A stretch of DNA of 64,000 nt, from IMG/VR virus record IMGVR_UViG_3300047472_000309, positions 1-64,000 of that record; one strand, given 5' to 3'. A program made the translations under genes and the position numbers. Position 1 is the first letter of the stretch, and each line of letters begins with the position of its first letter. Positions 25,979-43,079 of this stretch are shown in pieces. The notes under the pieces are model-generated. The model had not been told where the DNA came from and did no database searches. It was given only the letters and a program-made list of their open reading frames with translations.

Positions 25979-27220
25979 ATGGTAGACGTTTCTATCAAGG
26001 GCGTGTTTGAAAGCGAGTGTGCTCACCTTGCTTTGGACGCGCAACTGGCCAAACGCATCCATTTGTATACTGTCGGTTTCGCCCACAAAAACCAGGACCA
26101 CATCGAGTTCTTTGGCGGGAACCTGACTGGTGTGCAAGTGGTGCGCTTTACCGACGCTGATCGGGACCACTGGTTTACAGAGATTGTTCAGGCCGATGAA
26201 GGTGCCCTCGAAGCTCGCCTTCTCGCCTTGCCCACCGTGAACGAAAATTTCAACGTGTCCTCGGATACGATGAACCTCTCGTGCGCGTGGCTGCTGCACG
26301 CACTCCTGCACAGCAAGAAACTGAGCGACGCTCAGCGCCATCAGGCGATGCTGGATGTCGTGCTGGTGATGCAATACAAGTTCCTCACATCCCGTCTGTA
26401 CCGGCACTTTAAGTATCCGGCGGATCGTGCGACTGCAGAGGCTACCTACGCAGCCCTCACGTTTAAGTACGCTATCAAACAGTACGGCTCTTGGGCCGCA
26501 GTGCTCAATGCCCGCGCTGAAGAAGTGATCAGCCCGACCGGTCTTCACCGCAAAGCCATCGAACTGATGGACCCCGATAGCACCGTCATCTATTTGCTCA
26601 ATGACACGCAAGGTCGAATTCGTGACATGTTGAAAAACATTTACGACGTCTTCTTGCAAGTGCATCGGCAGGGTATCAAGATCAGCTCGACGAGTTCTCT
26701 CGTGGAACACGACGGGGTCGAGATCTTGAAGGACAAGTCGAAAAACCTCCTGGCTTACACCAGGTATATCAACTCGATCATCACCGACCGGAACTCCTTC
26801 ATTCGCGAAGAGCTGCTCACCGTTATTGAGAAGCAGATGAAGACGATGCCGCCCCGTCTTTTTCGCGAATCGCTCGAATGGATGTCGGACAATTACCGCC
26901 AGTCCGGCGCGAGTATGATCGAAGAGCTGCTCAACGAAACCCTGATCCACAGTTTTGACTACCTCGCGGAGAATCGGAACTTGGTGAGGAATTCTACGGA
27001 CTTGGCCAGCCTACTCACACGCTTGCGTGGTGTGTACATGAGTTCGCGGTCCACGGACCCTGCTCTGTTCTCGCTGCGGGAGAAAGCAGAAAAGATCGTG
27101 AAGCTCGCGACTAACAATAAGAACTCCAGTGTGATTGCGGCTGTGCGCACCGGGATACTGCTGTACTTGATCGCCCGCGCGTATTCGATGCGGTATTACT
27201 CCCAGAGCGCCGCTGCATAA
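25979..27220 (+). CDS. Conserved virion structural protein (phiKZ gp32-like, tentative)
   Basis: 413 aa, GAGGA RBS, adjacent to the terminase module. Confidence 0.7.
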   Translation: MVDVSIKGVFESECAHLALDAQLAKRIHLYTVGFAHKNQDHIEFFGGNLTGVQVVRFTDADRDHWFTEIVQADEGALEARLLALPTVNENFNVSSDTMNLSCAWLLHALLHSKKLSDAQRHQAMLDVVLVMQYKFLTSRLYRHFKYPADRATAEATYAALTFKYAIKQYGSWAAVLNARAEEVISPTGLHRKAIELMDPDSTVIYLLNDTQGRIRDMLKNIYDVFLQVHRQGIKISSTSSLVEHDGVEILKDKSKNLLAYTRYINSIITDRNSFIREELLTVIEKQMKTMPPRLFRESLEWMSDNYRQSGASMIEELLNETLIHSFDYLAENRNLVRNSTDLASLLTRLRGVYMSSRSTDPALFSLREKAEKIVKLATNNKNSSVIAAVRTGILLYLIARAYSMRYYSQSAAA

Positions 27221-27247
27221 GGCTTGGTCGCACGACCAGGTTCTACC

Positions 27248-27658
27248 ATGTCGCTTTTGAAGAGGTTAGCTACCCGAGGGTTCCTGTGGCTGGAGCACGT
27301 AAAGGGTAACAGGTCGTTCCAGCAAGAGGTCGTGATCCAAACGAATCGCCGCAATACGCTTCGGGTGATTCATCATTCGGGTTACGACATCACCATCTAC
27401 TGTCAGCGCTTGCAGTTCGAGACGGGCTACTCGCTCTGGCAATGGCCGAAGAAGAAACACCTGGCTTACCAGTTGTTTTCCACGACGACCAATGATGCAC
27501 CGGAATTGATTCGTCGGGCCTGTGACTTAGCCGTTACCTTGCCTGCCCTGTGTCCCGGTTATGTAGAAGACGAAGTGCAAAAGCTCTACGCCATTGATGC
27601 GTACGTGGATTTGATCACGGACAAATTAAGAGCGCTCAAGCAAAGCAGCTTCATCTAG
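27248..27658 (+). CDS. Hypothetical protein
   Basis: Start MSLLKR; followed by a hairpin-TATGCCG element. Confidence 0.65.
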   Translation: MSLLKRLATRGFLWLEHVKGNRSFQQEVVIQTNRRNTLRVIHHSGYDITIYCQRLQFETGYSLWQWPKKKHLAYQLFSTTTNDAPELIRRACDLAVTLPALCPGYVEDEVQKLYAIDAYVDLITDKLRALKQSSFI

Positions 27659-27815
27659 CGCGTATGGGGGAGGCTTCGGCCTCCCTCTATGCCGCGCATC
27701 TGTTGCTTATCTTGTTATGAGACGTATTATCCAGTTTAAGCTGGTTTCTACGGGTCATCCCCGGTGAGACTATGATCTCAAACTGGCTGATCAATTAACG
27801 TAAACGGGTGACAAA

Positions 27816-30083
27816 ATTATACTGTTCGAACAGGATTGGTACCGTTATCCTACTGCGATCATCGACACCAAGACCACCAACAAAAGTTGGATTCGTCTGG
27901 CCGCAGTGTATCGCTCGATGGGTATTAAGAACCACGCATTCCTGCTTGCGCTCGTGAATCCGAAACTGCAAGGGGTGGACCCCTTCAGCAAAGATCTCAC
28001 ACCTGAGCAGATGTACATGATCGCGGTGGAGTGCAAGATCAATCCCTGGTACTTCTTCCGGGAAATCGCCCGCGCGCCGGGTAACTCCGGCTCCGACGCG
28101 GTACCGCTTGAAGCGAACCGGGCCAACATTGCACTTTATTGGTCTTTTTTTAACCACATCTTCTTTACGCTGATTCAGCCACGTCAGACGGGTAAGTCCT
28201 TCTCGACCGATACGTTGATGAGCTACCTGATGAACGTGGTCTGTACGGGCACCAGCATTAACCTGTTGACCAAGGACGACAACTTGCGCCGCAAGAACAT
28301 TGAGCGGATCAAGGAAATCATGTCGGAGTTGCCGCCGTACCTGAGCCAGCGTTCAAAGGACGATGCGCAAAACGGTGAAGAAATCACCGTCAAGGCGTTG
28401 AAGAACTCGTACAACACGCACGTGCCGCAATCGAGCCCGAAGCGTGCGTACAACATGGGACGTGGTCTGACGACAGCGATCTTCCACATCGACGAGCCGC
28501 CGTTCCAGCCGAATATCGCGATTGCGCTGCCTGCTGCGCTGGCTGCAACGGGTGCTGCAGTGGAGCGTGCCAAGGCCGCTGGCGCCCCGTACGGCACCAT
28601 CCTGACGACCACTGCCGGGAAGAAGGACGACAAGGACGGCCGCTTTATTTACAAGCTGCTGGAAGACTCGGCCTCGTGGACCGAGAAGTTCTTTGACTGC
28701 CAGAACTGGGCCGAACTGGATCGCATGGTGCGCCGCAATTCGCGCGCTGGGCTGTTCCGCATCAACGGTACCTTCAGTCACCGTCAGTTGGGTAAGAGCG
28801 ATGAGTGGCTCAAGCAGAAGATTGAAGAATCGCTGCAAACGGGGGACGACGCGAATCGAGATTACTTCAACCTGTGGACTTCGGGTACGGAAAGCTCACC
28901 GCTCTCCACCAGCACCGCCGAGATGATTGCCTCGTCGCGGCTGGATGAGCTCTACACCTCGATCAGTGATCCGGATGGCTACATCACGCGCTGGTATATC
29001 CCGGAAGAGGAGATTGCCACACGGATGGCAACAGGCAAGTTCGTGCTCGGCATGGATACGTCCGAAGCCGGTGGGGGCGATGACATCTCGCTCGTCTTGA
29101 TGGATGTGGAAACGCTCGAAGTGGTGGCAGCGGGCTCGTATAACGAAACCAACCTGATTACCTTCTCGAAGTGGGTGTGCGATACGCTTGTTAAGTACTC
29201 GAACATCACGGCCGTCATCGAGCGGCGTTCCACCGGGGCGATGTTGCTCGATTACCTGCTGCTGATGTTGCCTAACCATGGTGAAGATCCGTTTAAGCGC
29301 ATCTTTAACAAGGTGGTGCAGGATTACGACGAGTATCCGGATCGTTACAAGGAAATCAAGGTGCCGATCGGTCGGCGCCCGACCGACATCTACGTGCGCT
29401 ACAAGACCACGTTCGGCTTTGCCACCTCGGGTTCGGGGGCTAACAGTCGCAATGCCTTGTATGGTCAGGTGCTCCAGGCAGCTGCTCAGCGCAGTGGCAT
29501 GAAGGTGCACGACAAGATGCTGGCCGGTCAGATCCTGGGTCTCGTGTACAAGAACGGCCGGATCGACCACGAAGATGGCGAACACGATGACTTGGTGATT
29601 GGCTGGTTGCTCTGCCATTGGTTCCTCATGCATGGCAAGAACCTGCAACACTATGGCATCGATCCTCGCCAGGTCATGTGTGCAGTCAGGACCAAGCAAG
29701 CTGAGTCGCAAGAGGACTTCTTCCGGCGCATGGAGCAACAAACCGTGCGCAGTCGTATCGAGGAGATCTACAACGCGCTCACCGGCGAGCACGATGACTT
29801 TGTGGCCGCGCGTCTGGAGCAGGAGCTGCGTATGCTGGATAAGAAGATCATTCTCGAACAGGATGAAATCTATTCGGTGGATGAGCTCATCCGTAGCGCT
29901 CGGGAAACCAAGCGCAACAAGGTGCGTAACTCCAATCTGTATCAGCAGTCACAGCAGAATCAGTATCTCGGCCACAATACCGGAATGCTGGTGACGAGTG
30001 ACTTGCCGATCTCGCATGTGGATATGTTTGGTTCACCCGCGAACTACGGGGTGTACTCGACCGCCGCAGGCAGTCGTTGGTAA
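27816..30083 (+). CDS. terL: Terminase large subunit (phiKZ gp25-like); start probably at non-canonical ATT 27816
   Basis: Walker A QPRQTGKS, Walker B FHIDE, coupling motif TTT, nuclease motifs LGMDTS and HDDLVI. The frame is open upstream of the track's GTG 27906 through ILFEQDWYRYP to TAA 27801. Confidence 0.93.
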   Translation: MILFEQDWYRYPTAIIDTKTTNKSWIRLAAVYRSMGIKNHAFLLALVNPKLQGVDPFSKDLTPEQMYMIAVECKINPWYFFREIARAPGNSGSDAVPLEANRANIALYWSFFNHIFFTLIQPRQTGKSFSTDTLMSYLMNVVCTGTSINLLTKDDNLRRKNIERIKEIMSELPPYLSQRSKDDAQNGEEITVKALKNSYNTHVPQSSPKRAYNMGRGLTTAIFHIDEPPFQPNIAIALPAALAATGAAVERAKAAGAPYGTILTTTAGKKDDKDGRFIYKLLEDSASWTEKFFDCQNWAELDRMVRRNSRAGLFRINGTFSHRQLGKSDEWLKQKIEESLQTGDDANRDYFNLWTSGTESSPLSTSTAEMIASSRLDELYTSISDPDGYITRWYIPEEEIATRMATGKFVLGMDTSEAGGGDDISLVLMDVETLEVVAAGSYNETNLITFSKWVCDTLVKYSNITAVIERRSTGAMLLDYLLLMLPNHGEDPFKRIFNKVVQDYDEYPDRYKEIKVPIGRRPTDIYVRYKTTFGFATSGSGANSRNALYGQVLQAAAQRSGMKVHDKMLAGQILGLVYKNGRIDHEDGEHDDLVIGWLLCHWFLMHGKNLQHYGIDPRQVMCAVRTKQAESQEDFFRRMEQQTVRSRIEEIYNALTGEHDDFVAARLEQELRMLDKKIILEQDEIYSVDELIRSARETKRNKVRNSNLYQQSQQNQYLGHNTGMLVTSDLPISHVDMFGSPANYGVYSTAAGSRW

Positions 30084-42544: not shown

Positions 42545-43079
42545 AGGTCGGACCTCCCGTACGGTAGTTAAGGGATTCCCAGTCCGTGCGCTCGAGCACG
42601 TAACCGTTTGCGTCCAGCGACGCTTCGTCGAAGAGGACCGCGCCGACGACCGCGCCTTCGGGGGCCTTCTGGTTAAAGAGCTGGGCGATGTGGATGCGGC
42701 TCGCGAAGCCCATCAGGCTCGGCGTATTACTGCGTTGCACCAGACGGTGGATCGCGCTGTGATGATAGTCGACCATGAAGTGGCCGATCTCGTGGTTATG
42801 CAGCCCAGCCTGGTAATCGAAGTTGTCTTCCCGATACATCTTCGTGATGTCGTCGATATGACTTCCGTTCATGTCCAGCAGATGCGGTGCAACGTGAAAC
42901 TCTTTACAGGCGCTATACGCCTCTTCTGCGCAATGCAGCACCTGACCCTGCAAGACGTTCTTCAGACGGCTCAGAGCGTGGTTTAAGAGCGCCGGAGCAC
43001 CATCCTTGTACACGGGGCGACCCGCTTGGTCCAAAGTGATGATCAACTGCACGTTTTCTTTGCGGTTTTGTTCTTTCAT
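42306..43079 (-). CDS. Hypothetical protein, possibly a degenerate DHFR-like fold
   Basis: LIITLDQAG and RIHIAQL...GAVLF loosely follow the DHFR strand pattern; start may be GTG 43052. Confidence 0.5.
   Translation of the reverse strand: MKEQNRKENVQLIITLDQAGRPVYKDGAPALLNHALSRLKNVLQGQVLHCAEEAYSACKEFHVAPHLLDMNGSHIDDITKMYREDNFDYQAGLHNHEIGHFMVDYHHSAIHRLVQRSNTPSLMGFASRIHIAQLFNQKAPEGAVVGAVLFDEASLDANGYVLERTDWESLNYRTGGPTCGRIRHLVYRHTSIPKSYPAVLSLDNSAWAAQAAARTKRDIERRVDVNPDGIVDPTLGFGTVKHDVIDPITGYRRPSWG

What the first reader, a model, noticed from the sequence alone, without database searches (positions are those of the whole stretch)
27740..27906. Terminase appears to start at ATT within a structured leader containing a uORF
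Seen: upstream of GTG 27906 the frame reads ATT-ATA-CTG-TTC-GAA-CAG-GAT-TGG (x-I-L-F-E-Q-D-W...YP.AIIDT.T.N.S). An in-frame TAA lies at 27801, with no ATG, GTG or TTG in between. As I recall, homologues start M-I-L-F-x-x-D-W, which puts ATT 27816 at the Met position, 5 nt after GGGTG. An out-of-frame uORF (ATG 27772, MISNWLIN*) has its ATG in a TGAGA/TCTCA hairpin loop, and GTCATCC can pair with the GGGTGAC RBS. Inference: deliberately low, possibly IF3-sensitive, terminase translation, or reinitiation or bypassing from the uORF.
Basis: partly seen in the sequence, partly recalled or inferred. Interest (0 to 1): 0.6.

Follow-up and report, generated by a model that had tools for sequence, protein, structure and literature searches.

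The report
Jumbo-phage terminase gene starting at ATT
The DNA-packaging enzyme gene of this uncultured giant phage has no normal start codon and most likely begins at a weak ATT codon behind a good ribosome-binding site, which is a rare but known way to keep a protein scarce.

Summary
The large terminase (TerL) frame is open from TAA 27801. Its conserved N-terminus starts at ATT 27816. The first canonical in-frame start is GTG 27906, 30 codons later. All relatives outside the window's close clade have ATG at or just upstream of this position.

ATT is not an assembly error. Eight other viral contigs in three further sequence variants lack ATG here: ATT-ATA, ATC-ATA, ATT-ATC and ATT-ATT. All keep a GGTG SD-like motif (GGTGA in three of the four variants) 4-5 nt upstream. 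Codons 2-30 differ almost only synonymously between these lineages, and the AF2 model places them in confidently folded helices. The ATT allele is a swapped patch of about 37 nt (SD, spacer, first five codons) in an otherwise ~94% identical gene.

Best reading: near-cognate AUU initiation, which lowers TerL output.

The "structured leader" is not supported (fold z -0.53, no conserved structure). The uORF's ATG is conserved but also occurs in ATG alleles, and it may be a phiKZ-type TATG late promoter. Bypassing and frameshifting do not fit. Reads could not be checked.

This is a new example of a known kind and of moderate interest.

The parts
27816..30083 (+). Large terminase subunit (TerL) coding sequence, 755 codons plus stop, as proposed with the ATT start
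   Evidence: phrog_2 terminase large subunit, E 3e-56. The AF2 model of residues 1-295 matches the T4 gp17 ATPase domain at E 3.7e-10. The Walker A residues Q124-T-G-K-S128 are invariant in 26 relatives.
27816..27818 (+). ATT, the proposed initiation codon, aligned with the ATG of homologues
   Evidence: FLC9, L011, L014, L016 and 19 more loci have ATG in this column. L007-L009 have ATC. L012, L013 and L015 have ATT.
27806..27811 (+). GGGTGA Shine-Dalgarno-like element, 4 nt before ATT
   Evidence: Duplex with the 16S 3' end is -6.8 kcal/mol with a 4-nt spacer. A GGTG core is kept in all four non-ATG variants (GGTGA in three, GGTGC in L012/13) and absent from the ATG alleles.
27794..27830 (+). 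Swapped initiation-region cassette: SD, spacer and the first five codons
   Evidence: Window versus L011 identity is 36% at -22..0 and 67% at 0..+15, against 88-92% upstream and 94-96% downstream.
27801..27803 (+). In-frame TAA that closes the TerL frame upstream
27906..27920 (+). First canonical in-frame starts (GTG 27906, ATG 27918). These are the default gene-caller start, which gives a protein truncated by 30-34 residues
   Evidence: They fall inside or after helix 23-34 of the model.
27772..27798 (+). Out-of-frame uORF MISNWLIN*. Its ATG sits in a conserved TATGA(T/C)CT block (TATG at 27771-27774)
   Evidence: The TATG motif with G as transcription start is the phiKZ late promoter consensus (PMC4666361). 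Applying it here is inference.
27710..27740 (+). Conserved upstream block, a possible promoter or regulatory element. It also opens a 16-codon frame, 27717-27767
   Evidence: Conserved in all window-type leaders. The mini-ORF is listed. It occurs once in the genome.
27666..27687 (+). GC-rich stem-loop after the upstream 144-aa gene (27224-27658)
   Evidence: Read. A near copy lies at G000 64058-64083 on the minus strand.
27808..27957 (+). Out-of-frame 49-codon ORF opening at the GTG inside the SD. Considered as a frameshift donor and rejected

Best explanation
TerL of this phiKZ-related jumbo phage is translated from the near-cognate codon AUU at 27816. The neighbouring AUA 27819 cannot be told apart from it. 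Initiator tRNA reads the codon, positioned by the GGGUGA Shine-Dalgarno element 4 nt upstream, so the protein begins M-I-L-F-E-Q-D-W like its homologues. The ATT is part of a ~37-nt initiation-region allele (SD, spacer, first five codons). This allele circulates by recombination among close relatives alongside a normal ATG allele. Its effect is inferred to be several-fold lower, possibly IF3-sensitive, synthesis of an enzyme needed in few copies. Shown here: no canonical start exists, the codons after ATT are conserved and under selection, the allele recurs in independent assemblies, and an SD is present. Inferred: that AUU itself is the initiation codon, that output is lowered, and that this is adaptive.
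For: No ATG, GTG or TTG lies between TAA 27801 and GTG 27906.

Homologues have ATG exactly at the ATT column.

Eight other viral contigs from different metagenomes lack ATG at this column, in three further variants: ATC-ATA, ATT-ATC and ATT-ATT. L006 and L010 repeat the window's version. Codon 1 is always ATY, codon 2 always an Ile codon and codon 3 always a Leu codon.

Between non-ATG lineages, codons 2-30 show synonymous:nonsynonymous codon differences of 7:0, 13:2 and 9:2. The rest of the gene shows 79:1, 92:8 and 83:9.

Residues 1-40 are modelled at pLDDT 93-96 with helices 5-10 and 23-34, so a start at residue 31 or 35 would cut the fold.

The non-ATG alleles all keep a GGTG core (GGTGA in three of four) 4-5 nt upstream. 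Their anti-SD duplex energies are -6.1 to -9.9 kcal/mol, against -2.4 to -6.4 for the nearest ATG alleles.

In two rough genome-wide screens, TerL is the only long gene in the 310-kb genome with this defect.

The genome encodes no special initiator tRNA, only tRNA-Tyr.

AUU starts are functional in E. coli (infC, pcnB) at about 4-8-fold below AUG (PMC3592434).
Against: The synonymous pattern in codons 6-30 could partly be inherited from a time under an ATG start if the cassette spread recently. Only codons 1-3 have clearly diversified within the cassette.

The four non-ATG variants probably share one origin, so they are not four independent events.

L015 has an in-frame GTG three codons upstream and a TTG at codon 3, so it may use a canonical start.

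The SD-strength contrast rests on few, related sequences.

The host and its anti-SD sequence are unknown.
Confidence: 0.65

Rival explanations
1. The start codon is still ATT or ATC, but most initiation is reinitiation by ribosomes that have just finished an upstream ORF. In the window that ORF is the 8-codon uORF ending 17 nt before ATT. In L007-L009 it is the homing-endonuclease ORF ending 9 nt before ATC. This would resemble the thrS-infC junction.
For: The uORF has its own GGTGA 4 nt before its ATG. In L007-L009 the endonuclease stop TGA overlaps the SD and lies 9 nt before ATC in the same frame. In L016 an upstream frame ends 3 nt before the TerL ATG, and read the FLC9 upstream frame appears to end in a TGA overlapping it. 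At the infC junction UAA-GGU-AUU, reinitiation and de novo initiation contribute about equally (PMC3592434).
Against: The uORF differs in frame, length and stop distance between relatives, and in L012 it runs on past the TerL start. It is equally present in ATG alleles (L011). Its SD is not conserved. If the conserved TATG is a phiKZ-type late promoter with G 27774 as the transcription start (PMC4666361), the uORF ATG is not in the mRNA.
Confidence: 0.17
2. TerL is made from GTG 27906 or ATG 27918 as an N-terminally truncated but functional protein. The upstream 30 codons would be a recently orphaned remnant.
For: These are the first canonical starts in frame. Default gene callers would choose them.
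Against: Almost all changes in codons 2-30 between non-ATG lineages are synonymous. Codons 1-3 stay I-I-L through at least five substitutions within the cassette. Residues 1-40 are confidently structured, and D7, W8 and A14 are nearly invariant in 26 relatives. No SD-like element is apparent in the bases just before 27906.
Confidence: 0.08
3. Translation starts at GTG 27808, inside the SD-like motif and out of frame, and shifts -1 on the A-AAA run at 27813-27816 into the TerL frame.
For: GTG sits at -8 in the window, L007 and L012, and in frame at -9 in L015. An AAAA run spans the junction in the window and L012.
Against: L007-L009 have no slippery run there. There is no X-XXY-YYZ heptamer and no SD upstream of the GTG. 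The SD-like element is too close for known -1 stimulators, which is established knowledge from dnaX.
Confidence: 0.04
4. The ATT is an assembly or sequencing artefact, or the gene is dead in a defective genome.
For: The record is a metagenome assembly, and reads could not be inspected.
Against: The same bases occur in L006 and L010 from other metagenomes. Three further non-ATG variants occur in six more contigs, two of them in complete genomes with terminal repeats or ~100% completeness. The 755-codon frame is intact and under purifying selection.
Confidence: 0.03

Closest known systems
E. coli infC (IF3) and pcnB, chromosomal genes initiated at AUU
   Same: A near-cognate AUU sits at the position of the initiator codon behind a usable SD. 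The expected consequence is reduced, IF3-discriminated initiation. In the L007-L009 relatives the junction (stop, GGU, GAC, AUU, AUC) resembles the thrS-infC junction UAA-GGU-AUU (PMC3592434).
   Different: No autoregulatory logic is evident, because TerL is not a translation factor. One variant uses AUC. The ATY allele co-circulates with an ATG allele as a swapped ~37-nt cassette. Nothing here has been tested experimentally.
Large terminase genes of phiKZ-related jumbo phages (Burkholderia phage FLC9, Ralstonia phages RP12 and RP31, Xanthomonas phage LucasX)
   Same: The same protein family and the same N-terminus M-I-L-F-x-x-D-W. FLC9 is ~80% identical in DNA, and that identity reaches into the leader.
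   Different: Those genes start with ATG. The window's clade has ATT or ATC.
Free-standing HNH (I-HmuI-like) homing endonuclease insertions next to essential phage genes
   Same: Relatives L007-L009 and L014 carry a 272-aa HNH_3 / I-HmuI NUMOD-like gene inserted directly upstream of TerL. The mosaic sequence patches around the insertion point are what homing-associated gene conversion produces, which is established knowledge.
   Different: The window itself has no endonuclease at this site. ATG and ATY alleles occur both with and without the endonuclease, so no simple link to the start codon is shown.
Translational bypassing (T4 gene 60) and programmed frameshifting (dnaX, prfB)
   Same: A short ORF ends just upstream of a downstream frame that lacks a start.
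   Different: No matched take-off and landing codons put the ribosome in the TerL frame. There is no slippery heptamer. The candidate elements are not conserved in relatives that share the missing start.

Membership tests
Genes with near-cognate AUU-type initiation (infC/pcnB kind) | No canonical start codon in frame between the upstream stop and the conserved N-terminus | tested here: met
   TAA 27801 to GTG 27906 holds no ATG, GTG or TTG.
Genes with near-cognate AUU-type initiation (infC/pcnB kind) | A near-cognate codon (AUU, AUC or AUA) exactly where homologues have AUG | tested here: met
   Alignment of 40 loci plus FLC9.
Genes with near-cognate AUU-type initiation (infC/pcnB kind) | A Shine-Dalgarno element at functional spacing | tested here: met
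   GGGTGA with a 4-nt spacer and -6.8 kcal/mol. The host's 16S 3' end was assumed to be generic.
Genes with near-cognate AUU-type initiation (infC/pcnB kind) | The codons directly after the near-cognate codon are translated | tested here: met
   Synonymous:nonsynonymous 7:0, 13:2 and 9:2 in codons 2-30. High-confidence fold of residues 1-40. The caveat on recent cassette spread is stated in the Against line.
Genes with near-cognate AUU-type initiation (infC/pcnB kind) | Initiation by fMet-tRNA at that codon, and dependence on IF3 level | not testable with these tools
   This needs N-terminal proteomics, ribosome profiling or reporters in IF3 mutants.
Large terminase subunit (TerL) | ASCE ATPase domain with a Walker A motif, related to known terminases | tested here: met
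   phrog_2 at E 3e-56. Foldseek match to the T4 gp17 ATPase at 3.7e-10. Invariant Q-T-G-K-S. The C-terminal nuclease domain was not examined separately.
uORF-dependent reinitiation / translational coupling | An upstream ORF that is translated and ends within a few to ~20 nt of the start, co-occurring with the weak start | tested here: inconclusive
   An ORF end lies 17 nt upstream in the window and 9 nt upstream in L007-L009. The uORF is also present in ATG alleles, varies in frame and may lie outside the transcript.
Programmed -1 frameshift | A slippery heptamer with a stimulator, conserved among sequences that need it | tested here: not met
   There is only an AAAA run in the window and L012, and none in L007-L009.
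Translational bypassing (gene 60 type) | Matching take-off and landing codons that restore the downstream frame | tested here: not met
   Take-off AAT 27793 would land at AAC 27803, followed by TGA, or at AAT 27815, which is the wrong frame (sequence).
Structured regulatory leader (RBS-sequestering hairpin) | Stability above shuffled controls and pairing conserved or covarying in relatives | tested here: not met
   z -0.53. RNAalifold consensus -1.56 kcal/mol with no pairs at the RBS. The pairing partners are absent or changed in L011, L012, L015 and L007.

The most novel reading that the evidence does not exclude
The ATY-start initiation cassette is a maintained low-output allele of an essential packaging gene. 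It is kept in the phage population alongside the ATG allele and shuffled by gene conversion driven by the homing endonuclease that inserts exactly at its 5' edge. In endonuclease-carrying genomes TerL synthesis would then depend on termination-reinitiation after the endonuclease ORF, tying the selfish gene's translation to an essential gene.
Probability: 0.12. Interest if true: 0.6.

Novelty: new member of a known kind. Interest (0 to 1): 0.4.

Why it matters
Gene callers will annotate this terminase 30 residues too short, at GTG 27906. Anyone expressing or modelling it would then lose a conserved, structured N-terminus. Natural AUU starts are few and natural AUC starts fewer. This clade offers a matched set of ATG, ATT and ATC alleles of one essential gene in otherwise ~90-99% identical backgrounds. 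That set is a ready-made natural experiment on start-codon strength, SD compensation and IF3 discrimination during phage infection. The same site is a homing-endonuclease insertion point, which may explain how initiation regions are exchanged between phages.

Tried and rejected
Independent assemblies served as the check instead.

Special initiator tRNA: the 310-kb genome holds only tRNA-Tyr.

Structured leader: single-sequence fold z -0.53, and the alignment fold found no conserved structure.

Genome-wide habit of non-canonical starts: the first tblastn screens were noisy. The refined screens left TerL as the only convincing case. Three other candidates (ORFs at 42946, 211779 and 290631) looked like off-frame ORFs or paralogue matches, not lost starts.

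More non-ATG alleles in metagenome contigs: a degenerate pattern scan returned 71 loci. Most were an unrelated K-I-L-F-E-Q-D-W protein, and the TerL relatives among them all had ATG.

Repeated promoter motif: the conserved leader blocks occur once or only a few times in the genome, so no promoter consensus could be derived. The sigma-70 scan gave nothing above chance.

Literature: a search for terminase genes with ATT starts found nothing relevant. One search call failed on term length.

Also rejected: bypassing, -1 frameshift from GTG 27808, and truncated start (see Rival explanations). A link between endonuclease presence and start-codon type is rejected because all four combinations exist.

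The large protein searches were not needed and not used.

Full report
**What the window is.** The window is the first 64 kb of a 310,654-bp IMG/VR virus record with direct terminal repeats. DNA relatives are phiKZ-related jumbo phages: Burkholderia phage FLC9 (~80% identity here), Ralstonia phages RP12 and RP31, and Xanthomonas phage LucasX. The gene in question is the large terminase subunit. It matches PHROG 2 "terminase large subunit" at E 3e-56. An AlphaFold model of residues 1-295 (pLDDT 84) matches the T4 gp17 ATPase domain at E 3.7e-10. The Walker A residues Q-T-G-K-S are invariant in 26 relatives.

**The observation.**
- An in-frame TAA lies at 27801.
- ATT 27816, ATA 27819 and CTG 27822 follow, and the first canonical in-frame start is GTG 27906.
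- GGGTG ends 5 nt before ATT.
- The out-of-frame uORF runs 27772-27798.
- The two possible pairings can be drawn as described.

The recalled homologue N-terminus is right. FLC9 reads ATG-ATT-CTC-TTT-GAA-GAA-GAT-TGG at the aligned place, and LucasX reads ATG-ATC-CTT-TTT. Among 40 related viral loci, 23 have ATG in exactly this column and 9 have ATG 1-7 codons upstream.

**ATT is real and recurrent.** Independent assemblies give the answer instead.
- L006 and L010, from other metagenomes, repeat the window's version.
- L007-L009 read ATC-ATA-CTC.
- L012 and L013 read ATT-ATC-CTC.
- L015 reads ATT-ATT-TTG.

All of these keep a GGTG core (GGTGA in all but L012/13, which read GGTGC) 4-5 nt before the ATY codon. 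The close relatives L011, L014, L016/17 and FLC9 have ATG behind a different, weaker purine motif. Two of the non-ATG genomes, the window's own and G002, are complete with terminal repeats.

**The 30 codons before GTG 27906 are translated.** Between non-ATG lineages, codons 2-30 differ by synonymous:nonsynonymous codon changes of 7:0, 13:2 and 9:2. This is like the gene body, which shows 79:1, 92:8 and 83:9. Within the cassette itself, codons 1-3 have changed at least five times yet remain Ile-Ile-Leu. Residues 1-40 are modelled at pLDDT 93-96, with helices at 5-10 and 23-34. D7, W8 and A14 are nearly invariant across 26 relatives. A start at residue 31 or 35 would cut this unit. One caveat applies. 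If the cassette spread recently, part of the signal in codons 6-30 was inherited from ATG times.

**The ATT is part of a swapped cassette, not a lone point mutation.** Identity between the window and L011 runs as follows:

| Region relative to ATT | Identity |
|---|---|
| -120..-22 | 88-92% |
| -22..0 | 36% |
| 0..+15 | 67% |
| +15..+885 | 94-96% |

L012 (ATT) and L014 (ATG) show the same pattern, with 96-99% identity in the gene body. Two alleles of the translation initiation region therefore circulate in this clade.

The site is also a mobile-element hotspot. In L007-L009 and L014, a 272-aa HNH_3 / I-HmuI-like homing endonuclease gene replaces the window's 27697-27806 and ends 9 nt before the TerL start. 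Homology between the window's genome and G002 begins exactly at 27807. All four combinations of endonuclease presence or absence with ATG or ATY exist, so no direct link to the start codon is shown.

**TerL is unique in the genome in this respect.** Three related genomes were fetched whole, at 93% and 90% nucleotide identity plus one more distant, together with a 98.8-kb partial record (G003). Screens for conserved N-termini lying upstream of the first canonical start were noisy. A direct screen then looked for ATG replaced by a non-start codon. TerL was the only long gene (755 codons) with no canonical start within 30 codons. The genome encodes only one tRNA, tRNA-Tyr, so no altered initiator tRNA is involved.

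**Mechanism.** The best reading is initiation by initiator tRNA at AUU 27816, directed by GGGUGA. AUA 27819 cannot be excluded as the actual codon. AUU starts work in E. coli for infC and pcnB. In reporter tests they gave 6-8-fold less protein than AUG, and 4-fold less at the natural infC junction (PMC3592434). Their use depends on context, temperature and nutrient state (PMC5499595 abstract). The SD duplexes of the non-ATG alleles are -6.1 to -9.9 kcal/mol, somewhat stronger than the -2.4 to -6.4 of the nearest ATG alleles. This suggests compensation, but the sequences are few and related. Lower terminase output is plausible for an enzyme needed in few copies. That step is inference.

**The leader and the uORF.** The leader is not unusually stable (z -0.53). 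Relatives share no consensus structure (-1.56 kcal/mol). The TGAGA/TCTCA stem and the GTCATCC:GGGTGAC pairing are lost in L011, L012, L015 and FLC9.

The uORF's ATG lies in an invariant TATGA(T/C)CT block. The peptide, its frame relative to TerL and its stop position all vary. The uORF is present in ATG alleles and absent where the endonuclease sits.

In phiKZ, late promoters have the consensus TATG, with the G as the transcription start (PMC4666361). If that holds here, the block is a promoter and the uORF ATG is not in the mRNA. This is an analogy only, because no repeated motif could be derived from the genome.

Reinitiation after an upstream ORF remains a possible contributor. It is most plausible in L007-L009, where the endonuclease stop overlaps the SD.

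Bypassing fails on frame. A -1 shift from GTG 27808 fails because L007-L009 lack any slippery run.

**Verdict.** The ATT-start reading is well supported by comparative evidence but unproven biochemically. The structured-leader, uORF and bypassing parts are not supported. This is a new natural example of a known mechanism. Two added points of interest are that it is an exchangeable allele coexisting with ATG and that it lies next to a homing-endonuclease insertion site.

Noticed in passing
L008:673-1491 (also L007, L009, L014:482-1300); corresponds to window 27697-27806: A 272-aa HNH_3 / I-HmuI NUMOD-like homing endonuclease gene is inserted directly upstream of TerL in some close relatives. 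It replaces the window's leader. It ends 9 nt before the TerL start, in the same frame in L008.
   Followed up: partly
window 27710-27740 and 27771-27778: Two sequence blocks in the TerL leader are conserved across window-type relatives. The first opens a 16-codon frame (27717-27767, MRRIIQFKLVSTGHPR) that has no SD. The second contains TATG, the phiKZ late-promoter consensus. Neither is repeated as an extended motif elsewhere in the genome.
   Followed up: partly
window 27666-27687; G000:C1:64058-64083 (-): A GC-rich stem-loop follows the 144-aa gene upstream of TerL and is not followed by a T run. It has a 96%-identical copy on the other strand just beyond the window's end.
   Followed up: no
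G000:C1:138703-138787 (-), outside the window: The 310-kb genome encodes a single tRNA, tRNA-Tyr(GTA). A distantly HNH-like ORF lies next to it at 138977-139150.
   Followed up: no
G001:C1 about 222833 (relative genome, not the window): A 756-codon ORF in the relative G001 has ACG where the window's genome and G002 have ATG behind an AAGGA motif. A canonical start lies 3 codons downstream, so this looks like a small start shift.
   Followed up: no
window 27808-27957 (+): The GTG inside the SD opens a 49-codon out-of-frame ORF overlapping the TerL 5' end. The same frame stays open for 49 and 63 codons in L007 and L012. This is probably incidental.
   Followed up: partly
window 25979-27220 and 27224-27658 (+): The two genes upstream of TerL are a conserved 413-aa protein of unknown function (phrog_2921, E 2e-141) and a 144-aa protein with no family hit. 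FLC9 has the same gene order.
   Followed up: no
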